The notes: a model not told the origin generated them from the sequence alone. A stretch of DNA of 64,000 nucleotides from Mantamonas sphyraenae STR306 (GCA_026936335.1 JAPMXV010000051.1:124001-188000), one strand, 5' to 3'; shown: positions 1 to 19,510, numbered from the stretch's first letter. Program-made: numbers and translations.

Positions 1-861
1 CAGCAACAATGATGCGGGTGTGTCCAGTGTCTGGTTTGTCGGAAACCGACGTTGGAAGGCGTGAATGTACTCGCGGACCAAGTCCACCTCGTGGTTCAGT
101 TGCACCCCTACTTGCTCACCCAGGCCACCCTTCACCCCATGACTCGAAAGCATACTTTCCCATTCAACTTGTGTCAGTTTGGGGGACAAGCGCACACTCG
201 TTGGTGAAAACTCCTTCACGGCCAACTCCGCTGCGGAATCTCGTGTGGAAAGAATCACTGCCCCGTTGTCCAGTCCGATGCGCTCAACAAGTCCCCTAAG
301 CTTTTCTCGGTCCGCCACAGTGATTCCGTCGAGTACAACCACCCACAACTGCCCGTCTCGCCCATACAGCTCCTGTACGCGCTGCACAACACGCGTCAGC
401 GTTGAATGCTTGTCCACATAGCCCTCCCTGGTGCCCAGCCTCTCATCCAGGTCCTCCAAACATTCTTGCAACCCATCTCCATGCCCAATTAACCACTTGG
501 ACTTGTTCTGTGGAGAGCGCATGGTCCTGTCCTTCAGCTCGGCTATGGCGCTTGTTTTCCCGCTTTTCGCCGGCCCGCTCACGACGATGAGTCCCCCTGG
601 CCGAATGTACACGTTTTCCATCGCTGTTCGTGGAGTGTTGTTGCTGGATGTGACGACCAGGCGTGCCTCCCGCTCCTTTCGAGCTTGGTTGCTGCGATTT
701 CGTTCTTTGACCCAGGCGTACCCGCTGGATAATCCTGCACACAGTGCAACGCCGTGCACGAGGAGTTGCATTGTATTCGCTACATCCTGTAGCTTTGTGG
801 AGGGGCCCTGTGCTGTTCTCCTTGGAGAGCCAGCAAACGTGCTGGCTGTTCGACGAAACAT
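1..861 (-). CDS. STAND-like P-loop NTPase, 3'-truncated by the window edge; absent from the supplied ORF track
   Basis: Manual translation: the minus frame is stop-free from 978 to 1. First ATG at 861 (MFRRTAS...). Hydrophobic segment LLVHGVALCAGLSSGYAWV (~709-768), Walker A LIVVSGPAKSGKT (~553-591), Walker B WVVVLDGI (~322-345), sensor-1-like VILSTRD (~238-258). Start uncertain; could be a continuation of the upstream giant gene. Confidence 0.75.
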   Translation of the reverse strand, partial: MFRRTASTFAGSPRRTAQGPSTKLQDVANTMQLLVHGVALCAGLSSGYAWVKERNRSNQARKEREARLVVTSSNNTPRTAMENVYIRPGGLIVVSGPAKSGKTSAIAELKDRTMRSPQNKSKWLIGHGDGLQECLEDLDERLGTREGYVDKHSTLTRVVQRVQELYGRDGQLWVVVLDGITVADREKLRGLVERIGLDNGAVILSTRDSAAELAVKEFSPTSVRLSPKLTQVEWESMLSSHGVKGGLGEQVGVQLNHEVDLVREYIHAFQRRFPTNQTLDTPASLLL

Positions 862-896: not shown

Positions 897-3800
897 TCAG
901 CGTGAATGCATGCCCACAAGCACTAAAAGGAAAACGAATCCTCCTCCCACAATGCCCAGATTGATGCGGCCATGATCGCTAATGCGGTTGTTGCGGGCTC
1001 GGGATCCATCGTCGTCGCTCCTGCTGCTGTCGGTGTCTGAGTCGGAATCACTGGATTCATCATCTGAGGATTCTGCTCTGTCCCCAGAGTCACCGCCGTT
1101 GCCATCATCGCCACCACCACCTCCACCTCCTCCAGCACCGGCATTCTCGCCACCTTGGGCATCGTCACCTTCACCGTCTCCTCCTCGTTGCGAGCGTATG
1201 TCGCTATTGACATTGTACGTATCACTATCGCTTCCGCTGCCATCGTTGTCCGAGTCTGCATCGCCGGACTCTTCATCTGAGGACACTGGTCTGTCCCCGG
1301 GGTCACCGCCGTCGCTATCATCGTCTCCACCTCCTCCACCTCTTCCAGCACCGGGATTCTCGCCACCTTGGGCATCGTCACCTTCACCGTCTCCTCCTCG
1401 TTGCGAGCGTATGTCGCTATTGACATTGTACGTATCACTATCGCTTCCGCTGCCATCGTTGTCCGAGTCTGCATCGCCGGACTCTTCATCTGAGGACACT
1501 GGTCTGTCCCCGGGGTCACCGCCGTCGCTATCATCGTCTCCACCTCCTCCACCTCTTCCAGCACCGGGATTCTCGCCACCTTGGGCATCGTCACCTTCAC
1601 CGTCTCCTCCTCGTTGCGAGCGAATGTCGCTATTGACATTGTACGTATCACTATCGCTTCCGCTGCCATCGTTGTCCGAGTCTGCATCGCCGGACTCTCC
1701 ATCTGAGGACACTGGTCTGTCCCCGGGGTCACCGCCGTCGCTATCGTCGCTACCACCATCTCCACCTCCACCTCTACCCATTTCAGCAGTATTCCCGACA
1801 CCTTGAGCATTGTCGCCTTCATCAGGTTGCGAGTGAATGTCGCTGTTGGCGGGGGAAGAGGATTGATCCTCCTGACCACCTGTCGAGACCGTACTTACTG
1901 CTTCTTCGACATTGTCACGAGCGAAAGAGCGGACAAGTTCCCCATGCCGCAGCGACCGGTTGTTCTCTCCCTTGGTATCGTGCACCGCAGCAATGGTCTT
2001 CAAACTTCTTACCGAGCCCTCATTCTCCTCCCTATCCCGGTTCGAGGACCATAGCGTCTCGGTGCATTTCTTGATGCTATTCAAGACAGCGAGCACGAGC
2101 TGACGGGATGCTTGTGTCGTTAGGAGGATCACTCTTGCTTGTTCATACAGCGCAAGCCCGATCGTACTCTCCCTTGGCCTGGTACACCCCAGCCATGTTG
2201 TTGATGCTCGCGGCCACATGTGCTCATCCCCACCATGCACCCGCGCATCTCCAGTGCCTGTTCGATCAGTGCCCGATCGTACTCTCCCTTGGCTAGTACA
2301 CCGCAGCCATGTTGTTGATGCTCGCGGCCACATCCGGGTGCTCATCCCCACCATGCACCCGTCGCCTGATCTCCAGTGCCTGTTCATGCAGCTCCAGTGC
2401 CCGATCGTACTCTCCCTTGGCATAGTACACCGCAGCCATGTTGTGGATGATCTTGGCCACACTCGGGTGCTCATCCCCACCATGCACCCGTCGCCTGATC
2501 TCCAGTGCCTGCTCATACAGCTCCAGTGCCTGATCGTACTCTCCCTTGGCCTCGTACACCGCAGCCATGTTGTAGATGCTCGCAGCGACTTCCGGGTGCT
2601 CACTCCCACCATGCACCCGTCGCCTGATCGCCAGTGCCTTCTCATACAGCTCCAGTGCCTGATCGTACTCTCCCTTGGCATGGTACACCACAGCCATGTT
2701 GTGGATGCTCGTGGCCACATCCGGGTGCTCATCCCCACCATGCACCCGTCGCCTGATCTCCAGTGCCTGTTCATGCAGCTCCAGTGCCCGATCGTACTCT
2801 CCCTTGGCATAGTACACCGCAGCCATGTTGTGGATGATCTTGGCCACACTCGGGTGCTCATCCCCACCATGCACCCGTCGCCTGATCTCCAGTGCCTGCT
2901 CATACAGCTCCAGTGCCTGATCGTACTCTCCCTTGGCCTCGTACACCGCAGCCATGTTGTAGATGCTCGCAGCGACTTCCGGGTGCTCACTCCCACCATG
3001 CACCCGTCGCCTGATCGCCAGTGCCTTCTCATACAGCTCCAGTGCCTGATCGTACTCTCCCTTGGCATGGTACACCACAGCCATGTTGTGGATGCTCGTG
3101 GCCACATCCGGGTGCTCATCCCCACCATGCACCCGTCGCCTGATCTCCAGTGCCTGTTCATGCAACTCCAGTGCCCGATCGTACTCCCCCTTGGCATAGT
3201 ACACCGCAGCCATGTTGTGGATGCTCGCAGCGACTTCCGGGTGCTCATCCCCACCATGCACCCGTCGCCTGATCGCCAGTGCCTGCTCATACAGCTCCAG
3301 TGCCTGATCGTACTCTCCCTTGGCCTCGTACACCGCAGCCATGTTGTGGATGCTCGCAGCGACTTCCGGGTGCTCATCCCCACCATGCACCCGTCGCCTG
3401 ATCCCCAGTGCCTGCTCATACAGCTCCAGTGCCTGATCGTACTCTCCGTTGGCCTCGTACACCGCAGCCATGTTGTGGATGCTCGCAGCGACTTCCGGGT
3501 GCTCATCCCCACCATGCACCCGCCGCTTGATCTCCAGTGCCTGCTCATACAGCTCCAGTGCCTGATCGTACTCTCCCTTGGCATCGTACACCACAGCCAT
3601 GTTGTGGATGCTCGCAGCGACTTCCGGGTGCTCATCCCCACCATGCACCCGTCGCCTGATCTCCAGTGCCTGTTCATGCAACTCCAGTGCCCGATCGTAC
3701 TCCCCCTTGGCATAGTACACCGCAGCCATGTTGTGGATGCTCGCAGCGACTTCCGGGTGCTCATCCCCACCATGCACCCGTCGCCTGATCGCCAGTGCCT

Positions 3801-6800
3801 GCTCATACAGCTCCAGTGCCTGATCGTACTCTCCCTTGGCCTCGTACACCGCAGCCATGTTGTGGATGCTCGCAGCGACTTCCGGGTGCTCATCCCCACC
3901 ATGCACCCGTCGCCTGATCTCCAGTGCCTGCTCATGCAGTTGCAGTGCCCGATCGTACTCTCCCTTGGCATGGTACACCACAGCCATGTTGTGGATGCTC
4001 GCAGCGACTTCCGGGTGCTCATCCCCACCATGCACCCGTCGCCTGATCTCCAGTGCCTGCTCATGCAACTCCAGTGCCCGATCGTACTCTCCCTTGGCAT
4101 GGTACACCACAGCCATGTTGTGGATGCTCGCAGCGACTTCCGGGTGCTCATCCCCACCATGCACCCGTCGCCTGATCTTCAGTGCCTGCTCATACAGCTC
4201 CAGTGCCCGATCGTACTCTCCCTTGGCCTCATACACCTCAGCCATGTTGTGGATGCTCGTGGCCACATCCGGGTGCTCATTCCCACCATGCACCCGTCGC
4301 CTGATCGCCAGTGCCTGCTCATGCAACTCCAGTGCCCGATCGTACTCTCCCTTGGTATGGTACACCACAGCCATGTTGTGCATGATCTTGGCCACACTCG
4401 GGTGCTCATCCCCACCATGCACCCGTCGCCTGATCTCCAGTGCCTGTTCATGCAACTCCAGTGCCCGATCGTACTCCCCCTTGGCATAGTACACCGCAGC
4501 CATGTTGTGGATGCTCGATGCCACATCCGGGTGCTCATCCCCACCATGCACCCGTCGCCTGATCTCCAGTGCCTGTTCATGCAACTCCAGTGCCCGATCG
4601 TACTCTCCCTTGGCATCGTACACCACAGCCATGTTGTGGATGCTCGTGGCCACATCCGGGTGCTCATCCCCACCATGCACCCGTCGCCTGATCTCCAGTG
4701 CCTGCTCATACAGCTCCAGTGCCTGATCGTACTCTCCCTTGGCCTCGTACACCGCAGCCATGTTGTGGATGCTCGCAGCGACTTCCGGGTGCTCATCCCC
4801 ACCATGCACCCGTCGCCTGATCGCCAGTGCCTGCTCATACAGCTCCAGTGCCTGATCGTACTCTCCCTTGGCCTCGTACACCGCAGCCATGTTGTGGATG
4901 CTCGCAGCGACTTCCGGGTGCTCATCCCCACCATGCACCCGTCGCCTGATCGCCAGTGCCTGCTCATACAGCTCCAGTGCCTGATCGTACTCTCCCTTGG
5001 CCTCGTACACCGCAGCCATGTTGTGGATGCTCGCAGCGACTTCCGGGTGCTCATCCCCACCATGCACCCGTCGCCTGATCCCCAGTGCCTGCTCATACAG
5101 CTCCAGTGCCTGATCGTACTCTCCGTTGGCCTCGTACACCGCAGCCATGTTGTGGATGCTCGCAGCGACTTCCGGGTGCTCATCCCCACCATGCACCCGT
5201 CGCCTGATCTCCAGTGCCTGCTCATGCAACTCCAGTGCCCGATCGTACTCTCCCTTGGTATGGTACACCACAGCCATGTTGTGGATGCTCGTGGCCACAT
5301 CCGGGTGCTCATCCCCACCATGCACCCGTCGCCTGATCTCCAGTGCCTTCTCATGCAACTCCAGTGCCCGATCGTACTCTCCCTTGGCATAGTACACCTC
5401 AGCCATGTTGTGGATGCTCGCAGCGACTTCCGGGTGCTCATCCCCACCATGCACCCGTCGCCTGATCGCCAGTGCCTGCTCATACAGCTCCAGTGCCTGA
5501 TCGTACTCTCCCTTGGCATCGTACACCACAGCCATGTTGTGGATGCTCGTGGCCACATCCGGGTGCTCATCCCCACCATGCACCCGTCGCCTGATCTCCA
5601 GTGCCTGTTCATGCAACTCCAGTGCCCGATCGTACTCCCCCTTGGCATAGTACACCGCAGCCATGTTGTGGATGCTCGCAGCGACTTCCGGGTGCTCATC
5701 CCCACCATGCACCCGTCGCCTGATCGCCAGTGCCTGCTCATACAGCTCCAGTGCCTGATCGTACTCTCCCTTGGCCTCGTACACCGCAGCCATGTTGTGG
5801 ATGCTCGCAGCGACTTCCGGGTGCTCATCCCCACCATGCACCCGTCGCCTGATCCCCAGTGCCTGCTCATACAGCTCCAGTGCCTGATCGTACTCTCCGT
5901 TGGCCTCGTACACCGCAGCCATGTTGTGGATGCTCGCAGCGACTTCCGGGTGCTCATCCCCACCATGCACCCGTCGCCTGATCTCCAGTGCCTGCTCATG
6001 CAACTCCAGTGCCCGATCGTACTCTCCCTTGGCATAGTACACCTCAGCCATGTTGTGGATGCTCGCAGCGACTTCCGGGTGCTCATCCCCACCATGCACC
6101 CGTCGTCTGATCTCCAGTGCCTGCTCATGCAACTCCAGTGCCCGATCGTACTCTCCCTTGGCATAGTACACCTCAGCCATGTTGTGGATGCTCGCAGCGA
6201 CTTCCGGGTGCTCATCCCCACCATGCACCCGTCGTCTGATCTCCAGTGCCTGCTCATGCAACTCCAGTGCCCGATCGTACTCTCCCTTGGCATGGTACAC
6301 CACAGCCATGTTGTGGATGCTTGCAGCGACTTCCGGGTGCTCATCCCCACCATGCACCCGTCGCCTGATCGCCAGTGCCTGTTCATGCAGTTGCAGTGCC
6401 CGATCGTACTCTCCCTTGGCATGGTACACCACAGCCATGTTGTGGATGCTCGCAGCGACTTCCGGGTGCTCATCCCCACCATGCACCCGTCGCCTGATCT
6501 CCAGTGCCTGCTCATGCAACTCCAGTGCCCGATCGTACTCTCCCTTGGCATCGTACACCACAGCCATGTTGTGGATGCTCGCAGCGACTTCCGGGTGCTC
6601 ATCCCCACCATGCACCCGTCGCCTGATCTCCAGTGCCTGCTCATGCAACTCCAGTGCCCGATCGTACTCTCCCTTGGCCTCGTACACCTCAGCCATGTTG
6701 TGGATGCTCGATGCCACATCCGGGTGCTCATCCCCACCATGCACCCGTCGCCTGATCGCCAGTGCCTGCTCATACAGCTCCAGTGCCTGATCGTACTCTC

Positions 6801-9800
6801 CCTTGGCCTCGTACACCGCAGCCATGTTGTGGATGCTCGCAGCGACTTCCGGGTGCTCATCCCCACCATGCACCCGTCGCCTGATCTCCAGTGCCTGCTC
6901 AAACAGCTCCAGTGCCCGATCGTACTCTCCCTTGGCATAGTACACCTCAGCCATGTTGTGGATGCTCGCAGCGACTTCCGGGTGCTCATCCCCACCATGC
7001 ACCCGTCGCCTGATCTCCAGTGCCTGCTCATGCAACTCCAGTGCCCGATCGTACTCTCCCTTGGCATCGTACACCACAGCCATGTTGTGGATGCTCGCAG
7101 CGACTTCCGGGTGCTCATCCCCACCATGCACCCGTCGCCTGATCTCCAGTGCCTGCTCATGCAACTCCAGTGCCCGATCGTACTCTCCCTTGGCATAGTA
7201 CACCTCAGCCATGTTGTGGATGCTCGCAGCGACTTCCGGGTGCTCATCCCCACCATGCACCCGTCGCCTGATCTCCAGTGCCTGCTCATGCAACTCCAGT
7301 GCCCGATCGTACTCTCCCTTGGCCTCGTACACCTCAGCCATGTTGTGGATGCTCGATGCCACATCCGGGTGCTCATCCCCACCATGCACCCGTCGCCTGA
7401 TCGCCAGTGCCTGCTCATGCAACTCCAGTGCCCGATCGTACTCTCCCTTGGTATGGTACACCAAAGCCATGTTGTGGATGCTCGTGGCCACAGACGGGTG
7501 CTCATCCCCACCATGCACCCGTCGCCTGATCGCCAGTGCCTGCTCATACAGCTCCAGTGCCTGATCGTACTCTCCCTTGGCCTGATACACCTCAGCCATG
7601 TTGTGGATGCTCGCAGCGACTTCCGGGTGCTCATCCCCACCATGCACCCGTCGCCTGATCGCCAGTGCCTGCTCATACAGCTCCAGTGCCCGATCGTACT
7701 CTCCCTTGGCATAGTACCCCTCAGCCATGTTGTGGATGCTCGCAGCGACTTCCGGGTGCTCATCCCCACCATGCACCCGTCGTCTGATCTCCAGTGCCTG
7801 CTCATGCAACTCCAGTGCCCGATCGTACTCTCCCTTGGCATGGTACAACTTAGCCATGTTGCTGATGCTCGTGGCCACACCCGAGGGTTGATCTCCACCA
7901 TGCAGCCGTCGCTTGATCTCCAGAGCCTGCTGATACAGCTCCAGTGCCTGATCGTACTCTCCCTTGGCATGGTACACCACAGCCATGTTGTGGATGATCG
8001 TGGCCACACTCGGGTGCTCATCTCCACCATGCACCCGTCGCCTGATCTCCAGTGCCTGCTCATGCAACTCCAGTGCCCGATCGTACTCTCCCTTGGTATG
8101 GTACACCACAGCCATGTTGTGGATGCTCGATGCCACATCCGGGTGCTCATCCCCACCATGCACCCGTCGCCTGATCTCCAGTGCCTGCTCATGCAACTCC
8201 AGTGCCCGATCGTACTCTCCCTTGGTATGGTACACCAAAGCCATGTTGTGGATGCTCGTGGCCACATCCGGGTGCTCATCCCCACCATGCACCCGTCGCC
8301 TGATCTCCAGTGCCTGCTCATGCAACTCCAGTGCCCGATCGTACTCCCCCTTGGCATGGTACACCACAGCCATGTTGTGGATGCTCGTGGCCACAGACGG
8401 GTGCTCATCCCCACCATGCACCCGTCGCCTGATCGCCAGTGCCTGCTCATACAGCTCCAGTGCCTGATCGTACTCTCCCTTGGCCTGATACACCTCAGCC
8501 ATGTTGTGGATGCTCGCAGCGACTTCCGGGTGCTCATCCCCACCATGCACCCGTCGCCTGATCGCCAGTGCCTGCTCATACAGCTCCAGTGCCCGATCGT
8601 ACTTTCCCTTGGCATCGTACACCACAGCCATGTTGTGGATGCTCGCAGCGACTTCCGGGTGCTCATCCCCACCATGCACCCGTCGCCTGATCGCCAGTGC
8701 CTTCTCATACAGCTCCAGTGCCTGATCGTACTCTCCCTTGGCATAGTACACCTCAGCCATGTTGTGGATGCTCGCAGCGACTTCCGGGTGCTCATCCCCA
8801 CCATGCACCCGTCGTCTGATCTCCAGTGCCTGCTCATGCAACTCCAGTGCCCGATCGTACTCTCCCTTGGCATGGTACACCACAGCCATGTTGCTGATGC
8901 TCGTGGCCACACCCGAGGGTTGATCTCCACCATGCAGCCGTCGCTTGATCGCCAGTGCCTGCTGATACAGCTCCAGTGCCTGATCGTACTCTCCCTTGGC
9001 ATGGTACACCACAGCCATGTTTTGGATGCTCGTGGCCACAGACGGGTGCTCATCTCCACCATGCACCCGTCGCCTGATCTCCAGTGCCTGTTCATACAGC
9101 TCCAGTGCCCGATCGTACTCTCCCTTGGCATGGTACACCACAGCCATGTTGGATGATCGTGGCCACACTCGGGTGCTCATCTCCACCATGCACCCGTCGC
9201 CTGATCGCCAGTGCCTGCTCATGCAACTCCAGTGCCCGATCGTACTCTCCCTTGGCATCGTACACCTCAGACATGTTGTGGATGCTCGCAGCGACTTTCG
9301 GGTGCTCATCCCCACCATGCACCCGTCGCCTGATCTCCAGTGCCTGCTCATGCAACTCCAGTGCCCGATCGTACTCTCCCTTGGCATAGTACACCTCAGC
9401 CATGTTGTGGATGCTCGCAGCGACTTCCGGGTGCTCATCCCCACCATGCACCCGTCGCCTGATCTCCAGTGCCTGCTCATGCAACTCCAGTGCCCGATCG
9501 TACTCTCCCTTGGTATGGTACACCACAGCCATGTTGTGGATGCTCGCAGCGACTTCCGGGTGCTCATCCCCACCATGCACCCGTCGCCTGATCTCCAGTG
9601 CCTGTTCATGCAACTCCAGTGCCCGATCGTACTCTCCCTTGGCCTCGTACACCTCAGCCATGTTGTGGATGCTCGATGCCACATCCGGGTGCTCATCCCC
9701 ACCATGCACCCGTCGCCTGATCTCCAGTGCCTGCTCATGCAACTCCAGTGCCCGATCGTACTCTCCCTTGGTATGGTACACCAAAGCCATGTTGTGGATG

Positions 9801-12800
9801 CTCGTGGCCACATCCGGGTGCTCATCCCCACCATGCACCCGTCGCCTGATCTCCAGTGCCTGCTCATGCAACTCCAGTGCCCGATCGTACTCCCCCTTGG
9901 CATGGTACACCACAGCCATGTTGTGGATGCTCGTGGCCACAGACGGGTGCTCATCCCCACCATGCACCCGTCGCCTGATCGCCAGTGCCTGCTCATACAG
10001 CTCCAGTGCCTGATCGTACTCTCCCTTGGCCTGATACACCTCAGCCATGTTGTGGATGCTCGCAGCGACTTCCGGGTGCTCATCCCCACCATGCACCCGT
10101 CGCCTGATCGCCAGTGCCTGCTCATACAGCTCCAGTGCCTGATCGTACTCTCCCTTGGCATCGTACACCACAGCCATGTTGTGGATGCTCGTGGCCACAT
10201 CCGGGTGCTCATCCCCACCATGCACCCGTCGCCTGATCTCCAGTGCCTGTTCATGCAACTCCAGTGCCCGATCGTACTCCCCCTTGGCATAGTACACCGC
10301 AGCCATGTTGTGGATGCTCGCAGCGACTTCCGGGTGCTCATCCCCACCATGCACCCGTCGTCTGATCTCCAGTGCCTGCTCATGCAACTCCAGTGCCCGA
10401 TCGTACTCTCCCTTGGCATGGTACAACTTAGCCATGTTGCTGATGCTCGTGGCCACACCCGAGGGTTGATCTCCACCATGCAGCCGTCGCTTGATCTCCA
10501 GTGCCTGCTGATACAGCTCCAGTGCCTGATCGTACTCTCCCTTGGCATGGTACACCACAGCCATGTTGTGGATGATCGTGGCCACACTCGGGTGCTCATC
10601 TCCACCATGCACCCGTCGCCTGATCTCCAGTGCCTGCTCATGCAACTCCAGTGCCCGATCGTACTCTCCCTTGGCATAGTACACCTCAGCCATGTTGTGG
10701 ATGCTCGATGCCACATCCGGGTGCTCATCCCCACCATGCACCCGTCGCCTGATCTCCAGTGCCTGCTCATGCAACTCCAGTGCCCGATCGTACTCTCCCT
10801 TGGTATGGTACACCAAAGCCATGTTGTGGATGCTCGTGGCCACATCCGGGTGCTCATCCCCACCATGCACCCGTCGCCTGATCTCCAGTGCCTGCTCATG
10901 CAACTCCAGTGCCCGATCGTACTCCCCCTTGGCATGGTACACCACAGCCATGTTGTGGATGCTCGTGGCCACAGACGGGTGCTCATCCCCACCATGCACC
11001 CGTCGCCTGATCGCCAGTGCCTGCTCATACAGCTCCAGTGCCTGATCGTACTCTCCCTTGGCCTGATACACCTCAGCCATGTTGTGGATGCTCGCAGCGA
11101 CTTCCGGGTGCTCATCCCCACCATGCACCCGTCGCCTGATCGCCAGTGCCTGCTCATACAGCTCCAGTGCCCGATCGTACTTTCCCTTGGCATCGTACAC
11201 CACAGCCATGTTGTGGATGCTCGCAGCGACTTCCGGGTGCTCATCCCCACCATGCACCCGTCGCCTGATCGCCAGTGCCTTCTCATACAGCTCCAGTGCC
11301 TGATCGTACTCTCCCTTGGCATAGTACACCTCAGCCATGTTGTGGATGCTCGCAGCGACTTCCGGGTGCTCATCCCCACCATGCACCCGTCGTCTGATCT
11401 CCAGTGCCTGCTCATGCAACTCCAGTGCCCGATCGTACTCTCCCTTGGCATGGTACACCACAGCCATGTTGCTGATGCTCGTGGCCACACCCGAGGGTTG
11501 ATCTCCACCATGCAGCCGTCGCTTGATCGCCAGTGCCTGCTGATACAGCTCCAGTGCCTGATCGTACTTTCCCTTGGCATGGTACACCACAGCCATGTTT
11601 TGGATGCTCGTGGCCACAGACGGGTGCTCATCTCCACCATGCACCCGTCGCCTGATCTCCAGTGCCTGTTCATACAGCTCCAGTGCCCGATCGTACTCTC
11701 CCTTGGCATGGTACACCACAGCCATGTTGTGGATGATCGTGGCCACACTCGGGTGCTCATCTCCACCATGCACCCGTCGCCTGATCGCCAGTGCCTGCTC
11801 ATGCAACTCCAGTGCCCGATCGTACTCTCCCTTGGCATCGTACACCTCAGACATGTTGTGGATGCTCGCAGCGACTTTCGGGTGCTCATCCCCACCATGC
11901 ACCCGTCGCCTGATCTCCAGTGCCTGCTCATGCAACTCCAGTGCCCGATCGTACTCTCCCTTGGCATAGTACACCTCAGCCATGTTGTGGATGCTCGCAG
12001 CGACTTCCGGGTGCTCATCCCCACCATGCACCCGTCGCCTGATCTCCAGTGCCTGCTCATGCAACTCCAGTGCCCGATCGTACTCTCCCTTGGCATAGTA
12101 CACCACAGCCATGTTGTGGATGCTCGCAGCGACTTCCGGGTGCTCATCCCCACCATGCACCCGTCGCCTGATCTCCAGTGCCTGCTCATGCAACTCCAGT
12201 GCCCGATCGTACTCTCCCTTGGCCTCGTACACCTCAGCCATGTTGTGGATGCTCGATGCCACATCCGGGTGCTCATCCCCACCATGCACCCGTCGCCTGA
12301 TCTCCAGTGCCTGCTCATGCAACTCCAGTGCCCGATCGTACTCTCCCTTGGTATGGTACACCAAAGCCATGTTGTGGATGCTCGTGGCCACATCCGGGTG
12401 CTCATCCCCACCATGCACCCGTCGCCTGATCTCCAGTGCCTGCTCATGCAACTCCAGTGCCCGATCGTACTCCCCCTTGGCATGGTACACCACAGCCATG
12501 TTGTGGATGCTCGTGGCCACAGACGGGTGCTCATCCCCACCATGCACCCGTCGCCTGATCGCCAGTGCCTGCTCATACAGCTCCAGTGCCTGATCGTACT
12601 CTCCCTTGGCCTGATACACCTCAGCCATGTTGTGGATGCTCGCAGCGACTTCCGGGTGCTCATCCCCACCATGCACCCGTCGCCTGATCGCCAGTGCCTG
12701 CTCATACAGCTCCAGTGCCTGATCGTACTCTCCCTTGGCATCGTACACCACAGCCATGTTGTGGATGCTCGTGGCCACATCCGGGTGCTCATCCCCACCA

Positions 12801-15800
12801 TGCACCCGTCGCCTGATCTCCAGTGCCTGTTCATGCAACTCCAGTGCCCGATCGTACTCCCCCTTGGCATAGTACACCGCAGCCATGTTGTGGATGCTCG
12901 CAGCGACTTCCGGGTGCTCATCCCCACCATGCACCCGTCGTCTGATCTCCAGTGCCTGCTCATGCAACTCCAGTGCCCGATCGTACTCCCCCTTGGCATG
13001 GTACACCACAGCCATGTTGTGGATGCTCGTGGCCACATCCGGGTGCTCATCCCCACCATGCACCCGTCGCCTGATCTCCAGTGCCTGTTCATGCAACTCC
13101 AGTGCCCGATCGTACTCCCCCTTGGCATAGTACACCGCAGCCATGTTGTGGATGCTCGCAGCGACTTCCGGGTGCTCATCCCCACCATGCACCCGTCGCC
13201 TGATCGCCAGTGCCTGCTCATACAGCTCCAGTGCCTGATCGTACTCTCCCTTGGCCTGATACACCTCAGCCATGTTGTGGATGCTCGCAGCGACTTCCGG
13301 GTGCTCATCCCCACCATGCACCCGTCGCCTGATCGCCAGTGCCTTCTCATACAGCTCCAGTGCCTGATCGTACTCTCCCTTGGCATAGTACACCTCAGCC
13401 ATGTTGTGGATGCTCGCAGCGACTTCCGGGTGCTCATCCCCACCATGCACCCGTCGTCTGATCTCCAGTGCCTGCTCATGCAACTCCAGTGCCCGATCGT
13501 ACTCTCCCTTGGCATGGTACAACTTAGCCATGTTGCTGATGCTCGTGGCCACACCCGAGGGTTGATCTCCACCATGCAGCCGTCGCTTGATCGCCAGTGC
13601 CTGCTGATACAGCTCCAGTGCCTGATCGTACTCTCCCTTGGCATGGTACACCACAGCCATGTTTTGGATGCTCGTGGCCACACTCGGGTGCTCATCTCCA
13701 CCATGCACCCGTCGCCTGATCTCCAGTGCCTGTTCATACAGCTCCAGTGCCCGATCGTACTCTCCCTTGGCATGGTACACCACAGCCATGTTGTGGATGA
13801 TCGTGGCCACACTCGGGTGCTCATCTCCACCATGCACCCGTCGCCTGATCGCCAGTGCCTGCTCATGCAACTCCAGTGCCCGATCGTACTCTCCCTTGGC
13901 ATAGTACACCTCAGACATGTTGTGGATGCTCGCAGCGACTTTCGGGTACTCATCCCCACCATGCACCCGTCGCCTGATCTCCAGTGCCTGCTCATGCAAC
14001 TCCAGTGCCCGATCGTACTCTCCCTTGGCATAGTACACCTCAGCCATGTTGTGGATGCTCGCAGCGACTTCCGGGTGCTCATCCCCACCATGCACCCGTC
14101 GTCTGATCTCCAGTGCCTGCTCATGCAACTCCAGTGCCCGATCGTACTCTCCCTTGGCATGGTACACCACAGCCATGTTGTGGATGCTTGCAGCGACTTT
14201 CGGGTGCTCATCCCCACCATGCACCCGTCGCCTGATCTCCAGTGCCTGCTCATGCAACTCCAGTGCCCGATCGTACTCTCCCTTGGCATAGTACACCTCA
14301 GCCATGTTGTGGATGCTCGCAGCGACTTCCGGGTGCTCATCCCCACCATGCACCCGTCGCCTGATCGCCAGTGCCTGTTCATGCAGTTGCAGTGCCCGAT
14401 CGTACTCTCCCTTTGCCTTGTATGCCAACGCCATTTTGTGGATGATCGTGGCCACAGACAGGTGCTCATCTTCACCATGCACCCGTCGCCTGATCTCCAG
14501 TGCCTGTTCATGCAGCTCCATTGCCCGATCGTACTCTCCCTTTGCCTTGTACGCCAACGCCATGTTTTGGATGATCGTGGCCACAGACGGGTGCTCATCT
14601 CCACCATGCACCCGTCGCCTGATCTCCAGTGCCTGTTCATACAGCTCCAGTGCCCGATCGTACTCTCCCTTGGCATGGTACACCACAGCCATGTTGTGGA
14701 TGCTCGCAGCGACTTCCGGGTGCTCATCCCCACCATGCACCCGTCGCCTGATCGCCAGTGCCTGTTCATGCAGTTGCAGTGCCCGATCGTACTCTCCCTT
14801 GGCATAGTACACCTCAGCCATGTTGTGGATGCTCGATGCCACATCCGGGTGCTCATCCCCACCATGCACCCGTCGCCTCATCTCCAGTGCCTGCTCATGC
14901 AACTCCAGTGCCCGATCGTACTCTCCCTTGGCCTCGTACACCTCAGCCATGTTGTGGATGCTCGCAGCGACTTCCGGGTGCTCATCCCCACCATGCACCC
15001 GTCGCCTCATCTCCAGTGCCTGCTCATGCAATTCCAGTGCCCGATCGTACTCTCCCTTGGCCTCGTACACCTCAGCCATGTTGTGGATGCTCGCAGCGAC
15101 TTCCGGGTGCTCATCCCCACCATGCACCCGTCGCCTGATCTCCAGTGCCTGCTCATGCAACTCCAGTGCCCGATCGTACTCTCCCTTGGCCTCGTACACC
15201 TCAGCCATGTTGTGGATGCTCGCAGCGACTTCCGGGTGCTCATCCCCACCATGCACCCGTCGCCTGATCTCCAGTGCCTGCTCATGCAACTCCAGTGCCC
15301 GATCGTACTCTCCCTTGGCATAGTACACCTCAGCCATGTTGTGGATGCTGGATGCCACATCCGGGTGCTCATCCCCACCATGCACCCGTCGCCTCATCTC
15401 CAGTGCCTGCTCATGCAACTCCAGTGCCCGATCGTACTCTCCCTTGGCCTCGTACACCTCAGCCATGTTGTGGATGCTCGCAGCGACTTCCGGGTGCTCA
15501 TCCCCACCATGCACCCGTCGCCTCATCTCCAGTGCCTGCTCATGCAATTCCAGTGCCCGATCGTACTCTCCCTTGGCCTCGTACACCTCAGCCATGTTGT
15601 GGATGCTCGCAGCGACTTCCGGGTGCTCATCCCCACCATGCACCCGTCGCCTGATCTCCAGTGCCTGCTCATGCAACTCCAGTGCCCGATCGTACTCTCC
15701 CTTGGCCTCGTACACCTCAGCCATGTTGTGGATGCTCGCAGCGACTTCCGGGTGCTCATCCCCACCATGCACCCGTCGCCTGATCTCCAGTGCCTGCTCA

Positions 15801-18800
15801 TGCAACTCCAGTGCCCGATCGTACTCTCCCTTGGCATAGTACACCTCAGCCATGTTGTGGATGCTCGATGCCACATCCGGGTGCTCATCCCCACCATGCA
15901 CCCGTCGCCTCATCTCCAGTGCCTGCTCATGCAACTCCAGTGCCCGATCGTACTCTCCCTTGGCCTCGTACACCTCAGCCATGTTGTGGATGCTCGCAGC
16001 GACTTCCGGGTGCTCATCCCCACCATGCACCCGTCGCCTCATCTCCAGTGCCTGCTCATGCAAATTCCAGTGCCCGATCGTACTCTCCCTTGGCCTCGTA
16101 CACCTCAGCCATGTTGTGGATGCTCGCAGCGACTTCCGGGTGCTCATCCCCACCATGCACCCGTCGCCTGATCTCCAGTGCCTGCTCATGCAACTCCAGT
16201 GCCCGATCGTACTCTCCCTTGGCCTCGTACACCTCAGCCATGTTGTGGATGCTCGCAGCGACTTCCGGGTGCTCATCCCCACCATGCACCCGTCGCCTGA
16301 TCTCCAGTGCCTGCTCATGCAACTCCAGTGCCCGATCGTACTCTCCCTTGGCATAGTACACCTCAGCCATGTTGTGGATGCTCGAGCCACATCCGGGTGC
16401 TCATCCCCACCATGCACCCGTCGCCTCATCTCCAGTGCCTGCTCATGCAACTCCAGTGCCCGATCGTACTCTCCCTTGGCCTCGTACACCTCAGCCATGT
16501 TGTGGATGCTCGCAGCGACTTCCGGGTGCTCATCCCCACCATGCACCCGTCGCCTCATCTCCAGTGCCTGCTCATGCAGTTGCAGTGCCCGATCGTACTC
16601 TCCCTTTGCCTTGTACGCCAACGCCATTTTGTGGATGATCGTGGCCACAGACGGGTGCTCATCCCCACCATGCACCCGTCGCCTGATCGCCAGTGCCTGC
16701 TCATACAGCTCCAGTGCCCGAGCGTACTCTCCCTTGGCATGGTACACCTCAGCCATGTTGTGGATGATCGTGGCCACACTCGGGTGCTCATCTCCACCAT
16801 GCACCCGTCGCCTGATCGCCAGTGCCTGCTCATACAGCTCCAGTGCCCGATCGTACTCTCCCTTGGCATAGTACACCTCAGCCATGTTGTGGATGCTGGA
16901 TGCCACATCCGGGTGCTCATCCCCACCATGCACCCGTCGCCTCATCTCCAGTGCCTGCTCATGCAACTCCAGTGCCCGATCGTACTCTCCCTTGGCATAG
17001 TACACCTCAGCCATGTTGTGGATGCTCGCAGCGACTTCCGGGTGCTCATCCCCACCATGCACCCGTCGCCTGATCTCCAGTGCTTGCTCATACAGCTCCA
17101 GTGCACGCTCGTACTCTCCCTTGGTATGATACACCAAAGCCACGTTGTGGATGCTCGTGGCCACAGACGGGTGCTCATCCCCACCATGCACCCGTCGCTT
17201 GATCTCCAGTGCCTGTTCATACAGCTCCAGTGCCCGATCGTACTCTCCCTTTGCTTCGTTCATCTCAGCCAAGTTGTGCATGCTCCTTCCCCAACCCTCA
17301 TTCTCATCCCCATCCATGCCTGCCCTCTTCTGCACCTCCATCACCTCCTCCAGCACCCTCTCCGCCTCTTCATATGCTCCCATCCATTCATGCACCTCTG
17401 CCACATTCTGCCCAACCCAACACACGTCTTTCACCTCACCTGCTGCTTGGCATGCTGCATGACACACCTTCCACACCCGTTCCCCATGCATAAGCATCCC
17501 TCTGTGCCACACCAGCTCCTCCAATGCCCCACGGCTGTTGATTTGGAACTCCTTCCACAGCATCCTCAGCACACGCTGACATGCCTCCATTCCCCCGTCT
17601 GTCTCCGCCTGTAGCTCCTCCCCTCCTCGCGCCATCATCTGCACCAATTCATGCACCTGCCAACCATCCCCATCCACAGCCCGTTGCAACAGCGACACAC
17701 GCTTCAGCGCCTTCATAGCCTTCTTCGCTCTCCTCTTGGCCTTTTCCCTGCTACCAACTCCGTCCACATCCTCCATCAGTGTCACTACCACCCGCTCCTG
17801 CACCCCTCCCCCATCCAACAGTGCCAGACACTGCATCAGTCCCACTGCATCCTCGTTCTCCTCCCCAGCTGCCTCCATCGCCATCTTCCACACTGCCATC
17901 GCCGTCATGTCGTACACATCTGACACAATTCCATCCTCCATAACCTCCACACTCGCCTTCAGTCCCTCTCTGAAGTCGCTCACTCGCGTTTCGTCTTCCT
18001 CTTCCCCAATCACAGCCGCTGCTTGTCGCACAGCCAGCGCCATCCCTCCCAGAAGCCCCTTCAGCTCCCAATACGCCTTCACCTCCTCCTCTTCATCCTC
18101 TCCATCCACTATCACCACTCCCTCACTGGCAAACACTGCATCCACCTCCTTGTCCTCCATGATCCCCACTCGCACCACTTTGTCCACCGCCCTCTTGTCC
18201 CAAATCCCATCCTTCCACGTCGTCACCACCACCGTCCCTCCCTCCTGCAGCACAGGTTCCACATCGTCCCACTTCTCCACTCCATCCATAACCATCACCC
18301 ACCGTCGTCCCTTCAGCGCACGCATCGTCTGCCCCGCCATCCCTTCCCGCACCTCCTCCTTGTTCGCCATACCCACCTTTTCATCCGTCAACACCCCCAA
18401 TGCCACACCCAATTGCAGCACATCACTCATCACCTCCTCCCTGCTCTGCCCACGCACCCACCACACCACCTCTGCCGCCCTTTCCTCCTTCACCTTCCAC
18501 GCATACATCTGTGCCACACTTGTCTTGCCCATGCCCCGTGCCCCATGCATCACCACCACCCCGTCTTCACCCCACACCTTCTCCATGACCCCATTCCTCT
18601 CCACCAGCTCTCTTTCCTTGCTCAGATTGTCCACCCGCTTTGCCCATCCTGCCTCTGCCTCCTTTGCACTTCTCCCTCTCCCATTCACCAGCCTCTCCTT
18701 CTCCCACCCCTCCCACGTCACCAACACTGCCTTCTTCCCCTCTCTGACCCCACCTGCCTTCTGTGCTTCCCCAAACGCCGTCTCCACGCTTTCCCCCGCT

Positions 18801-19510
18801 CCCAATGCCTCATAGAACGCCCCTGCTATCTTCACAGCTGCCCCATCCAGCACCTTCTCCCTGTATCCAATCACCACTGGCACATACTCACCCACCTTCT
18901 TTGCCATCTCCTCGCTCTCACACCCGTTCAGAAACACCAGCACGGGCCTTGCCTCCCTCACTGCATCCACAAGTGTCTGCCGCATCACATCCGCATCCTC
19001 AGCCTCCACGTACTCCCTTCCCATGTGTGCCGCAATATGCACCATGTGCTCCCCATACTCACGCACAAGCCGCACCACAGCGTCCTGACGCGTCTCCAGC
19101 CTCGCCAATGGCTCCAATGGCGACTCATGACACACCCCCTCAATCACCCGCTGCTCCTCCACGGACCCCAGTGTCCCATCCCCATCATTCCCCAGCACCA
19201 GCACCCTCACATCCCTCATTCCGCCCTCCTCCCACCAGTGATCACCAAACTTCCCCCTTCTTTTCGTGTTCTCATCCTTTCCCTGCCCATCCCTCCCTCC
19301 AGACGACGAAGATGACTCACCCGTATGCGTCCCACCCACCCTCCCCACTCCATCCACAACCACACCCTCTTCCTCACCCCCCTCCCGCCCTTCCCTCTCG
19401 CGGCCGCTTTCCCCTCTTGACATCTCCACCTCCCCCGCCCTTCCCTTCCCTCCCTCCTCCCTCTCTCTCCTCCCCCCTGCTTCCCCATCTGTACTCTCCC
19501 CTTTCTGCAT
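897..19510 (-). CDS. Giant NLR-like protein (~6,100-6,200 aa): CHAT protease + NB-ARC/STAND + ~117 TPR (kinesin-light-chain-like, 43 aa) + acidic Gly/Asp/Ser repeats + C-terminal hydrophobic helix; frameshifted in this assembly
   Basis: Stitched from ORFs 9092..19510, 16056..16370, 2293..14865 (TPR frame below ~9150) and 897..4160 (tail below ~2150). CHAT: MVHIAAH, LVFLNGCES, VPVVIGY, D-AA-IAGAFYEALGAGESVETAF. NB-ARC: GARGMGKT, WVMVMDGVE, VVVTTW, GGMALAVRQAAA, VHELVQ. Indels against the repeat consensus at ~16385 (-1), ~16062 (+1), ~9150 (-2) and several at ~2150-2295. Alternative start ATG at 19219 (MRDVRVLVLG) avoids overlap with the HLTF ORF. Confidence 0.85.
1107..1745 (-). repeat. Three near-identical tandem 213-bp (71-aa) coding repeats, D/G/S-rich, with degenerate flanking copies
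   Basis: The motif ctcctcgttgcgagcg recurs at 1181, 1394 and 1607 (period 213). Unit: DSDGGDPGDRPVSSDEESGDADSDNDGSGSDSDTYNVNSDIRSQRGGDGEGDDAQGGENPGAGRGGGGGDD. Confidence 0.95.
2135..17285 (-). repeat. Tandem array of ~117 copies of a 129-bp coding unit (43-aa TPR)
   Basis: Consensus MAEVYYAKGEYDRALELHEQALEIRRRVHGGDEHPEVAASIHN; ~15.15 kb / 129 bp = ~117 units; no spacers between units. Confidence 0.97.

What the first reader, a model, noticed from the sequence alone, without database searches (positions are those of the whole stretch)
897..19510. Giant protease-armed NLR-like immune receptor (CHAT-NB-ARC-~117xTPR) in a protist
Seen: one coding unit of ~18.6 kb joins an N-terminal CHAT domain, an NB-ARC-type STAND NTPase and ~15 kb of near-identical TPRs. 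Established: effector-STAND-repeat is the NLR architecture. Fungal allorecognition NLRs (HET-E/HNWD type) keep highly homogeneous repeats that reshuffle to change specificity, and CHAT/caspase-like proteases activate gasdermins in bacteria. Inference: this is a self-diversifying, protease-triggering innate-immunity or allorecognition receptor. Its sensor array is far longer than typical NLRs (on the order of 100 nm if extended). Best candidate in the window for an undescribed system.
Basis: partly seen in the sequence, partly recalled or inferred. Interest (0 to 1): 0.9.

Follow-up and report, generated by a model that had tools for sequence, protein, structure and literature searches.

The report
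Giant protease-armed immune-type receptor gene
A marine protist (Mantamonas) carries an immune-receptor-like gene whose sensor of repeated units has recently grown to about 116 near-identical units. The design itself is already known from fungi and bacteria, and the assembled gene is interrupted in several places.

Summary
On the minus strand lie a short CHAT (caspase-fold) domain, an NB-ARC STAND NTPase and a 15.1-kb array of about 116 tandem 129-bp (43-aa) TPR_10/12 units.

It is not one intact 18.6-kb ORF. The longest ORF has 3,472 aa (19510-9092). Three internal frameshifts, a stop at 2293-2295, a decayed last unit and an out-of-frame C-terminal cap and tail interrupt it.

The three internal frameshifts all sit in >=99.5%-identical duplicated blocks of a PacBio-CLR assembly and may be consensus errors. 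The 3' damage lies in unique sequence and is probably real.

The gene belongs to a family of about 12 Mantamonas sphyraenae paralogs with 5-24 units each. This scan had already noted that family elsewhere in the genome (s1-582073, s1-596404).

The family's TPR units evolve in concert across loci. They vary at canonical concave-face positions (pN/pS 1.7-3.6), as in fungal NLRs with highly conserved repeats. The giant array is a recent amplification and is less diverse than its paralogs.

CHAT-armed NLRs are known in fungi and bacteria, so this is an extreme new member of a known kind. Expression, true array length and protease function are untested.

The parts
19220..19510 (-). Low-complexity stretch that is either an N-terminal extension or a 5' leader. 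The start codon is uncertain (ATG at 19510, 19423 or 19219).
   Evidence: The ORF opens at 19510. It overlaps the end of the upstream SNF2-HIRAN-RING (HLTF/Rad5-like) ORF 19377-22706. The motif 'WEEGGM' just before the Met at 19219 is conserved even in the 50%-identity subfamily.
18725..19219 (-). Short CHAT (caspase-fold, clan CD) protease domain. The conserved residues are His 19025-19027 (in 'HMG' instead of 'HG'), His 19037-19039 and Cys 18920-18922.
   Evidence: Pfam CHAT scores 19.5 bits, below its cut-off. The paralog profile gives 8,594 hits, and the top ones carry Pfam CHAT at 33-95 bits. The alignment keeps H61, H65 and C100. The AF2 model has pLDDT 86.4, and Foldseek ranks SAVED-CHAT, separase, C11 protease and caspases highest.
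18089..18571 (-). NB-ARC STAND NTPase. The P-loop GARGMGKT lies at 18521-18544.
   Evidence: Pfam NB-ARC scores 36.4 bits against a cut-off of 23.5. The P-loop is invariant in 9 paralogs. Read directly from the translation: Walker B-like 'VMVMDG', 'VVVTTW', GLPL-like 'GGMALAV' and MHD-like 'VHE'.
17627..17857 (-). Winged-helix-like module of NB-ARC-TPR proteins (DUF7779).
   Evidence: Pfam DUF7779 scores 26.7 bits, just under its cut-off of 27.
2156..17285 (-). Array of about 116 tandem 129-bp (43-aa) TPR_10/12 units. There are 73 distinct nucleotide units and 61 distinct protein units, and mean pairwise identity is 92%.
   Evidence: There is no in-frame stop in 115 units when each segment is read in the TPR frame.
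14801..16477 (-). Four-unit (516-bp) block repeated 3.25 times at 99.6-99.8% identity. It holds frameshifts 1 and 2.
7708..12865 (-). Twenty-unit (2,580-bp) block duplicated in tandem. The copies differ by 10 substitutions plus the 2-nt deletion, and 7 of the 10 substitutions fall in codons 39-43. The second copy holds frameshift 3.
16380..16390 (-). Frameshift 1: GCATCG becomes GCTCG (1-nt deletion) in unit 6.
   Evidence: The string is unique in the array, while the intact form occurs 9 times.
16058..16070 (-). Frameshift 2: TT becomes TTT (1-nt insertion) in unit 9. It restores the frame after three out-of-frame units.
9144..9157 (-). Frameshift 3: CCACAAC becomes CCAAC (2-nt deletion) in unit 62. 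The N-terminal frame then stops at 9092-9094.
2291..2301 (-). Frameshift 4 in unit 115 (1-nt deletion). It creates TAG at 2293-2295 and ends the frame used by units 63-115.
2176..2290 (-). Decayed last unit of 115 nt. It carries four deletions and one insertion, net -14 nt.
2040..2153 (-). C-terminal capping segment, 'ALYEQARVILLTTQASRQLVLAVLNSIKKC...'. It is homologous to the caps of the close paralogs but sits in a third frame, after a further 2-nt deletion. The paralogs' stop codon is absent here.
   Evidence: 73% identity to the cap at C67:115502-115621.
1015..1768 (-). Acidic Gly/Asp/Ser-rich repeats, 213 bp (71 aa) x 3.5. They are in the same open frame as the cap.
897..1014 (-). Conserved acidic stretch followed by a C-terminal hydrophobic segment (about 909-959) and the stop codon (897-899). 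This is a tail-anchor-like module.
   Evidence: It is 55% identical over 64 aa to the C-terminus of another CHAT protein at C68 (L037:23-3037).

Best explanation
This is a real member of a Mantamonas sphyraenae multigene family of CHAT-NB-ARC-TPR STAND (NLR-like) proteins. Recent unequal crossing-over blew its TPR array up from the family's usual 5-24 units to about 116. The duplicated blocks of 4 and 20 units are still 99.5-99.8% identical.

The three internal frameshifts are most likely uncorrected PacBio-CLR consensus errors. If so, the gene still encodes a protein of about 5,700 aa, or at least 3,472 aa, that ends at the TAG in unit 115. The damaged junction to the old C-terminal cap and the acidic, tail-anchor-like module is probably real.

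Inferred mechanism, by analogy with NB-ARC/NLR proteins. None of these steps is shown.
1. The TPR superhelix binds a ligand on its concave face, where the family's hypervariable residues sit.
2. Binding releases the NB-ARC switch.
3. Nucleotide-dependent oligomerisation brings the N-terminal CHAT protease domains together.
4. The activated protease cleaves an unknown substrate.

Repeat shuffling and patch conversion within and between loci generate new sensor variants.
For: - Domains.
- Family: about 7 paralogs are 80-83% identical and about 5 are roughly 50% identical in the N-terminal 730 aa. Their arrays have 5-24 units.
- The N-terminal 633 codons carry no stop or frameshift. dN/dS is about 0.4 against paralogs at dS 0.22-1.0, the same as between other paralogs.
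- No in-frame stop occurs in 115 units.
- All three internal indels lie inside the >=99.5%-identical blocks, which make up 46% of the array. 150-bp Illumina polishing cannot work there.
- The assembly is RSII CLR + FALCON + Racon/Pilon (PMC10492846). Three indels in about 6.8 kb of unpolishable sequence looks to me like a plausible residual error rate.
- Every giant unit's nearest neighbour is another giant unit, which indicates local amplification.
- TPR pS between subfamilies is 0.14, against 0.52-0.57 in the N-terminal region, which indicates concerted evolution.
- Cross-validated hypervariable sites show pN/pS 2.1-3.6. A-priori concave-face positions 33, 34, 2, 5, 9, 12 and 13 show 1.7-2.8, against 0.25-0.45 elsewhere. 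The repeat register comes from Pfam TPR_1/2, and the positions come from PMC1261162.
Against: - The 3' end is broken in unique, polishable sequence: TAG at 2293-2295, 14 nt missing from the last unit, and 2 nt missing before the cap.
- No transcript evidence was obtained. Only Logan contig sets of unclear type could be laid, and paralogs cross-map on them.
- No read evidence for or against the frameshifts or the array length.
- The giant array is less diverse at hypervariable positions 18 and 35 than its paralogs. That is also what a young non-functional amplification would show.
- No substrate (gasdermin or other) was found nearby.
- Protease, NTPase and immune roles are all inferred.
Confidence: 0.5

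Rival explanations
1. A recently pseudogenised paralog. The frameshifts are real. Once freed from selection, the TPR array behaves like a coding-derived minisatellite and has expanded by unequal crossing-over. At most a truncated 3,472-aa product with three garbled units is made.
For: - Six frame-disrupting lesions are present as assembled.
- The 3' junction, cap and tail are out of frame in unique sequence.
- Diversity at the hypervariable sites is lower than in paralogs.
- Only one frameshifted unit (128 bp, in the C76 array) was seen in about 113 paralog-array units, against three internal frameshifts in 116 here.
- The Illumina-derived contigs laid on 13750-19700 showed no repaired letters at frameshifts 1 and 2. 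This is weak evidence.
Against: - The N-terminal 633 codons are intact with dN/dS about 0.4.
- There are no nonsense codons in 115 units.
- All three internal indels sit exactly where polishing fails.
- The lesions must be very young, because each sits in an otherwise identical copy of a duplicated block.
Confidence: 0.3
2. The array length is partly an assembly artefact. FALCON over-expanded the array on noisy CLR reads, or joined two haplotypes in tandem. The real gene would then lack, for example, the second 2,580-bp block or the extra 516-bp blocks.
For: - The genome is diploid, read N50 is 11 kb, and the reads are error-prone RSII reads.
- The near-identical tandem blocks are where such errors arise.
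- No piece listed by read laying spans the stretch that was laid.
Against: - Outside the two block families (about 54% of the array), the order of distinguishable unit types is unique. An 11-kb-N50 read set at 106x should tile it.
- Removing all duplicated copies would still leave about 85 units.
Confidence: 0.12
3. A non-immune STAND regulator or scaffold. The family would use TPRs to bind endogenous partners, as some bacterial NB-ARC-TPR regulators do, and the CHAT domain would process a housekeeping substrate.
For: - NLR-related STAND proteins with non-immune roles exist (the AfsR example in the abstract of bioRxiv 10.64898/2026.09.02.748808, listed).
- No defence partner was found nearby.
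Against: - The family is lineage-specific and multi-copy.
- Its repeats evolve in concert with pN/pS above 1 at ligand-face positions. That is the signature of fast-changing recognition, not of a conserved partner.
Confidence: 0.06

Closest known systems
Fungal NLRs with highly conserved repeats (HET-E/HET-D/HNWD WD40 type and fungal NB-ARC-TPR NLRs)
   Same: - Both have the tripartite effector-NOD-repeat layout.
- The repeats are about 90% identical at the DNA level.
- Variation is concentrated at a few binding-face positions with an excess of non-synonymous change.
- Shuffling and concerted evolution occur within and between loci (review PMC10197012; here).
   Different: - The host is a CRuMs protist, not a fungus.
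- There are 116 repeats. From memory, not checked here, fungal arrays reach at most a few dozen.
- The gene is interrupted as assembled.
- Allorecognition is not testable here.
CHAT-carrying NLRs of fungi and multicellular bacteria, and CHAT/gasdermin two-gene clusters
   Same: [quoted passage not shown] A bacterial example with the same short-CHAT-NB-ARC-TPR order is P0090 from GCA_046328715.1.
   Different: - No gasdermin gene lies beside it.
- The genome-wide Pfam gasdermin search was blank, but its control was silent too.
- The CHAT domain is a minimal form of about 165 aa with His-Met-Gly instead of His-Gly.
SAVED-CHAT protease of bacterial cyclic-oligonucleotide defence (PDB 8tl0); separase; caspases
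   Same: It is the best structural match of the N-terminal domain (E 1.4e-8, TMq 0.75, 22-24% identity). The caspase fold carries the His/Cys dyad.
   Different: Activation there is by ligand-induced SAVED filaments, not by a STAND NTPase. There are no TPR arrays.
Apaf-1/CED-4 apoptosome
   Same: This is the works-like analogy. NB-ARC oligomerisation activates a caspase-fold protease by induced proximity.
   Different: There the caspase is a separate protein recruited through CARD domains, and the sensor is WD40. Here the protease is part of the same polypeptide and the sensor is TPR. No orthology is implied.
Very long TPR_10/12 proteins in public data (for example P0158 at 5,115 aa, P0228 at 4,565 aa, P0198 at 4,490 aa, and the TIR-NB-ARC-TPR protein P0255 at 3,626 aa)
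   Same: They have the same repeat type and a comparable overall size, so arrays approaching 100 TPRs have precedents.
   Different: All of them are uncharacterised. They share only 24-42% identity with this array, most have other or no effector domains, and whether their repeats are near-identical was not examined.

Membership tests
CHAT domain (Pfam PF12770, caspase-like clan CD peptidases) | Score above Pfam's gathering cut-off | tested here: not met
   The score is 19.5 bits against a cut-off of 24, and only profile positions 223-264 match. In the six-frame genome search, one paralog (C67) reaches 26.9 bits when its neighbouring matches are added.
CHAT domain (Pfam PF12770, caspase-like clan CD peptidases) | Significant profile homology to bona fide CHAT proteins | tested here: met
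   The profile of 9 Mantamonas domains gives 8,594 hits at E<=1e-3 and 378 at E<=1e-10. Of 20 hits scanned, 19 carry Pfam CHAT at 33-95 bits over the matched stretch.
CHAT domain (Pfam PF12770, caspase-like clan CD peptidases) | Caspase-like alpha/beta fold | tested here: met
   The AF2 model has pLDDT 86.4 and pTM 0.85. The top Foldseek matches are SAVED-CHAT 8tl0 (E 1.4e-8), separase, C11 protease, caspases and legumain.
CHAT domain (Pfam PF12770, caspase-like clan CD peptidases) | Catalytic His and Cys after consecutive beta strands | tested here: met
   H65 and C100 align with the 'HG' and 'NAC' motifs of 35 CHAT proteins and are invariant in 9 paralogs. The Gly after the His is replaced by Met.
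CHAT domain (Pfam PF12770, caspase-like clan CD peptidases) | Cysteine-protease activity | not testable with these tools
   This needs biochemistry.
NB-ARC STAND NTPase (PF00931) | Score above the gathering cut-off, with P-loop and downstream motifs | tested here: met
   The score is 36.4 bits against 23.5. The P-loop GARGMGKT is invariant. Walker B-like, GLPL-like and MHD-like motifs can be read in the translation. DUF7779 scores 26.7 bits against a cut-off of 27.
TPR_10/TPR_12 repeats | Score above the gathering cut-off, tandem 42-43-aa units | tested here: met
   TPR_10 scores 259 bits and TPR_12 scores 217 bits on the first seven units alone. There are 116 units.
NLR-type receptors with highly conserved, shuffling repeats (fungal HNWD/HET-E type) | Effector - NOD - repeat order in one polypeptide | tested here: inconclusive
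   The order is present. Continuity of the reading frame through the whole array is broken in the assembly.
NLR-type receptors with highly conserved, shuffling repeats (fungal HNWD/HET-E type) | Repeats highly similar at the DNA level, with evidence of recombination or concerted evolution within and between loci | tested here: met
   - Identity is 92% within the array and 87-89% between loci.
- TPR pS between subfamilies is 0.14, against 0.52-0.57 in the N-terminal region.
- Tandem block duplications and recurrent YYA-to-YHT patch changes are present.
NLR-type receptors with highly conserved, shuffling repeats (fungal HNWD/HET-E type) | Excess non-synonymous change at predicted ligand-contact positions | tested here: met
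   pN/pS is 3.6 in the giant at sites chosen on the paralogs, and 2.1 for the reverse test. It is 1.7-2.8 at the a-priori concave positions, against 0.25-0.45 elsewhere. This is a counting method, not a likelihood test.
NLR-type receptors with highly conserved, shuffling repeats (fungal HNWD/HET-E type) | Repeat-number and specificity polymorphism among individuals; a role in non-self recognition or cell death | not testable with these tools
   Only one genome of the species is available.
CHAT-gasdermin pyroptosis-like modules | A gasdermin or other pore-forming substrate gene adjacent to the protease | tested here: not met
   The neighbours are an HLTF-like helicase, a phosphodiesterase, a Na/H exchanger, a kinase and a P-loop/TPR ORF. 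The genome-wide PF04598 search was blank, but its control was silent too, so absence is not shown.

The most novel reading that the evidence does not exclude
The gene is intact in vivo and makes a protein of about 5,700-6,100 aa. It would be a protease-armed STAND receptor carrying about 115 near-identical TPRs, a superhelical rod on the order of 100 nm. If the 3' lesions are also errors or are bypassed, it would be anchored to a membrane by the acidic, hydrophobic tail. That would make it the longest NLR-type sensor known. It would also be a natural case of receptor diversification by repeat amplification and patch conversion in a deep-branching, non-fungal eukaryote.
Probability: 0.2. Interest if true: 0.7.

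Novelty: new member of a known kind. Interest (0 to 1): 0.45.

Why it matters
If the family works as inferred, receptor-fused caspase-like proteases are not confined to fungi and bacteria. The fungal way of generating sensor diversity, through near-identical repeats that recombine within and between loci, would also extend to the CRuMs lineage near the base of Amorphea. That bears on how old NLR-like, protease-triggered defence is in eukaryotes.

The giant copy shows how far such an array can run away, with 20-unit blocks duplicated only about 0.4% divergence ago. It would be a convenient marker locus for repeat instability among isolates. It is also a caution: long near-identical coding arrays in CLR-based assemblies carry unpolished indels and can look either broken or bigger than they are.

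Tried and rejected
- **AlphaFold2 on the paralog-only alignment.** Mean pLDDT was 41, so the model was unusable. It worked only after 35 distant CHAT hits were added.
- **Read evidence.** The single run search returned only Logan contig sets labelled 'DNA?'. Laid on 13750-19700, they were short, cross-mapped from paralogs and left holes in the most repetitive part. They settle neither the frameshifts nor expression. I considered reading runs X3 and X4 as RNA. I rejected that because most of their depths track X1 at a ratio of about 0.04-0.08, as low-coverage DNA would. Frameshifts 3 and 4 were never examined with reads.
- **Word-based protein search with the N-terminal 643 aa.** It found only six weak NB-ARC-TPR hits at 24-27% identity. 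The Mantamonas proteome is not in that database.
- **Gasdermin (PF04598) genome search.** It was blank, but so were the controls, so it is uninformative.
- **Intron rescue of the 3' end.** There are 104 formal GT-AG pairs that join the array frame to the cap frame. All leave 5-6 out-of-frame residues before the cap, because the 2-nt deletion lies downstream of every acceptor. Without RNA none has support.
- **Bacterial contamination.** I rejected this because the flanking genes are eukaryotic, on a 578-kb contig.
- **Antisense ORFs of 2,312 and 2,391 aa on the plus strand.** These are by-products of a unit that lacks stops in those frames.
- **Broken frames.** The pieces were searched apart or read with X at the breaks.
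Full report
**Source**

The window is G000:C51:124001-188000 of a 25.06-Mb, 78-contig genome. Earlier scan notes name the organism as Mantamonas. The size and contig number match the published M. sphyraenae assembly. That assembly used PacBio RSII CLR reads (N50 11 kb, about 106x), was assembled with FALCON and was polished with Racon and then Pilon using 150-bp Illumina reads. The organism is reported to be diploid (PMC10492846). Flanking genes are ordinary eukaryotic genes (an HLTF/Rad5-like helicase, a phosphodiesterase, a Na/H exchanger and a kinase), so this is nuclear DNA and not contamination.

**The observation**

Tandem Repeats Finder reports one array at 2156-17285, with period 129 bp, 117.4 copies and 92% matches. 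Anchoring on the KGEY codons resolves 116-117 units of 43 aa on the minus strand. Of these, 112 are exactly 129 bp long.

Upstream of the array the ORF that opens at 19510 contains the following.
- **NB-ARC.** Pfam gives 36.4 bits against a cut-off of 23.5, followed by DUF7779 at 26.7 bits (cut-off 27).
- **Strong TPR_10/TPR_12 matches**.
- **A domain of about 165 aa** that starts at the Met at 19219 and scores only 19.5 bits on Pfam CHAT, below the cut-off of 24.

I tested the CHAT call in three other ways.
1. A profile of the domain from nine Mantamonas paralogs (alignment A1) finds 8,594 proteins at E<=1e-3 among 1.84 billion. Nineteen of the twenty hits I scanned carry Pfam CHAT at 33-95 bits on the matched stretch. 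Several have the order short-CHAT, then NB-ARC/NACHT/nSTAND, then TPR/WD40/HEAT.
2. With 35 of these hits added to the alignment, AlphaFold2 gives a confident model (pLDDT 86.4, pTM 0.85). Its best PDB matches are the SAVED-CHAT protease 8tl0 (E 1.4e-8, TMq 0.75), then separases, C11 proteases, legumain and caspases.
3. The His and Cys of the CHAT dyad are kept (H65 and C100 counted from the Met at 19219) and are invariant in the paralogs. The usual His-Gly reads His-Met-Gly.

**What is not confirmed: a single intact coding unit**

Following the TPR frame along the array gives this picture.
- Seven units are in the N-terminal frame.
- A 1-nt deletion follows (GCATCG to GCTCG, 16380-16390).
- Three units are then out of frame.
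- A 1-nt insertion (TT to TTT, 16058-16070) restores the frame.
- Fifty-two units are in frame.
- A 2-nt deletion follows (CCACAAC to CCAAC, 9144-9157), and the N-terminal frame stops at 9092-9094.
- Fifty-three units are in a second frame.
- A 1-nt deletion in unit 115 makes TAG at 2293-2295.
- The last unit lacks 14 nt in four gaps.
- A further 2 nt are missing before the C-terminal cap.

The longest real ORF is therefore 3,472 aa (19510-9092).

The start is also uncertain. The ATG at 19510 lies inside the end of the upstream HLTF-like ORF (stop at 19374-19376). However, the residues just before the Met at 19219 are conserved even in the distant subfamily.

**The 3' end**

The close paralogs end their arrays with a cap of about 45 aa and then a stop. 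The giant keeps a homologous cap (2040-2153, 73% identical to the C67 cap). Here it sits in a third frame and lacks the stop.

That frame stays open for 418 codons. It runs through 3.5 acidic 71-aa repeats (1015-1768) to a hydrophobic C-terminus and the stop at 897. The last 64 aa are 55% identical to the C-terminus of another CHAT protein on contig C68. This tail-anchor-like module is therefore a genuine coding segment.

Whether it is, or was, joined to the receptor cannot be decided. There are 104 formal GT-AG pairs that would join the frames, but all leave junk residues before the cap. I have no RNA evidence.

**Family context**

The genome holds about seven paralogs that are 80-83% identical and about five that are roughly 50% identical over the N-terminal 730 aa. 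Their TPR arrays have 5 to 24 units. Only one frameshifted unit was seen among about 113 paralog units.

The giant's N-terminal 633 codons have no stop or frameshift. They show dN/dS of about 0.4 against paralogs at dS 0.22-1.0, the same as paralog-to-paralog comparisons. The gene has therefore been under selection for most of its history.

This scan had already described the family on other contigs (s1-582073, s1-596404). What is particular to this finding is the array.

**Array anatomy**

Mean identity between units is 92%. There are 73 distinct nucleotide units and 61 distinct protein units.

Two recent tandem duplications stand out.
- A 4-unit (516-bp) block is present 3.25 times at 99.6-99.8% identity (14801-16477).
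- A 20-unit (2,580-bp) block is present twice (12865-10286 and 10285-7708). The copies differ by ten substitutions plus the 2-nt deletion.

Seven of those ten substitutions fall in codons 39-43. The same double change (Tyr-Ala to His-Thr) occurred twice, each time yielding a unit type that exists elsewhere in the array. This looks like patch conversion rather than point mutation.

Every giant unit has its nearest neighbour inside the giant array, so the amplification was local.

**Are the frameshifts real?**

All three internal indels are lone changes inside the >=99.5%-identical blocks. Each affects a copy that is otherwise identical to its sister. Those blocks make up 46% of the array. They are exactly where 150-bp reads cannot be placed uniquely, so Pilon cannot correct Racon's residual indels.

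The chance that three random lesions all fall in those blocks is about 0.1. Three indels in about 6.8 kb seems to me within the residual error expected of CLR consensus. That figure is my estimate, not a measurement. I therefore lean (about 65%) to assembly error for these three.

The lesions at 2150-2300 lie in unique sequence, and one unit has four separate gaps. I take them as probably real.

The only read evidence I could obtain was Logan contigs of four runs laid on 13750-19700. They show no repaired letters at the first two sites. However, they are fragmented, cross-mapped from paralogs and filtered in the most repetitive part, so they decide nothing. Array length, expression and frameshifts 3 and 4 remain untested, and both read tools are exhausted.

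**Evolution of the repeats**

Synonymous divergence between TPR units of the two subfamilies is 0.14, the same as within arrays. Their N-terminal regions differ at pS 0.52-0.57. The repeats therefore evolve in concert across loci on different contigs.

Variation is concentrated at unit positions 29, 32, 35, 39, 42 and 43, plus 11, 16 and 18. Pfam's TPR_1/TPR_2 alignments fix the register, with unit position 35 equal to canonical position 5. On that register the first six positions are canonical positions 33, 2, 5, 9, 12 and 13. These are six of the seven positions that Magliery and Regan found most variable and exposed on the concave, ligand-binding face (PMC1261162).

The pN/pS results are as follows.

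| Sites tested | Array tested | pN/pS at sites | pN/pS elsewhere |
|---|---|---|---|
| Chosen on the paralogs | Giant | 3.6 | 0.25 |
| Chosen on the giant | Paralogs | 2.1 | 0.45 |
| A-priori concave set | Giant | 1.7 | 0.41 |
| A-priori concave set | Paralogs | 2.8 | 0.45 |

These are counting estimates on recombining repeats, not likelihood tests.

The giant is less diverse than its paralogs at positions 18 and 35 and uses fewer residue types at positions 39 and 42. It is a young amplification of a few unit types, not an especially rich sensor.

**Comparison with what is known**

- CHAT peptidases are a described class of fungal NLR effector domain. [quoted passage not shown] Highly conserved repeats that shuffle within and between genes are an established fungal NLR feature (PMC10197012).
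- I found a bacterial protein with the same short-CHAT, NB-ARC, TPR order (P0090, from GCA_046328715.1).
- Very long TPR_10/12 proteins also exist: 4,000-5,115 aa in metagenomes and up to 3,744 aa in Branchiostoma. Among the shorter hits some carry CHAT (2,000-3,270 aa) or NB-ARC (up to 3,626 aa).
- No gasdermin or other obvious substrate lies in the window. The genome-wide Pfam gasdermin search was blank with silent controls.

**Verdict**

The architecture is a known kind in a new lineage, and the scan has already recorded the family. This copy is its extreme member.

My odds are as follows.
- About 0.5: a real giant gene that still codes for at least 3,472 aa and probably about 5,700 aa.
- About 0.3: a just-pseudogenised paralog with a runaway array.
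- About 0.12: the array length is partly mis-assembled.
- About 0.06: a non-immune regulator.

The activation mechanism is inferred from the families involved and is shown nowhere here. It runs from ligand binding on the TPR concave face, through the NB-ARC switch and oligomerisation, to proximity activation of CHAT.

Noticed in passing
window 1-861 (minus strand), continuing to G000:C51:122720 (L036:7723-9861): A separate 713-aa ORF starts only 36 nt after the stop at 897. It has a P-loop-like 'GPAKSGKTS' that aligns weakly with the giant's Walker A, and one weak TPR_10/12 match (29 bits). It looks like a second, degenerate STAND-like gene directly downstream, as note s1-603740 proposed.
   Followed up: partly
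L037:23-3037 (G000:C68:213523-216537): A 1,005-aa ORF has an unassigned N-terminal 580 aa, a Pfam CHAT domain (29 bits) and a C-terminus made of two copies of the same acidic, hydrophobic tail-anchor-like module found at window 897-1014. It is followed by a 1,787-aa LRR protein. CHAT proteases in this genome may often be membrane-tethered.
   Followed up: partly
L013 (G000:C67:112553-113482): One close paralog carries a hydrophobic insert of about 45 aa ('...WLWNIALGSLVMLVLIGLAVSIV...') between the CHAT domain and the P-loop. It is a possible transmembrane segment inside an NLR-like protein.
   Followed up: no
G000, seven loci (C5:280368, C13:240111, C68:203388, C68:215266, C49:453018, C51:534893, C67:112913): The six-frame Pfam CHAT search finds at least seven further CHAT-domain loci, in open frames of 484-2,387 aa. 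The protist has a sizeable CHAT repertoire beyond this family.
   Followed up: no
window 2156-17285: The variable residues of the giant array are not freely combinatorial. Positions 29 and 32 occur in only seven pairings (E-A in 60 of 113 units). The four most variable positions give 27 combinations. This speaks against a TALE-like one-residue code (note s1-603692).
   Followed up: partly
window 19377-22706 (minus strand): The SNF2-HIRAN-RING (HLTF/Rad5-like) helicase ORF ends 136 nt inside the giant gene's first possible start codon. Either the receptor starts later (19423 or 19219) or the two genes are packed with overlapping ends.
   Followed up: no
L036:1979-4756 (G000:C51:116979-119756, minus strand): A 926-aa ankyrin-repeat ORF and an unassigned 816-aa ORF lie just beyond the window start. 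Together with the STAND genes, the neighbourhood is rich in repeat-array genes (compare note s1-603712).
   Followed up: no
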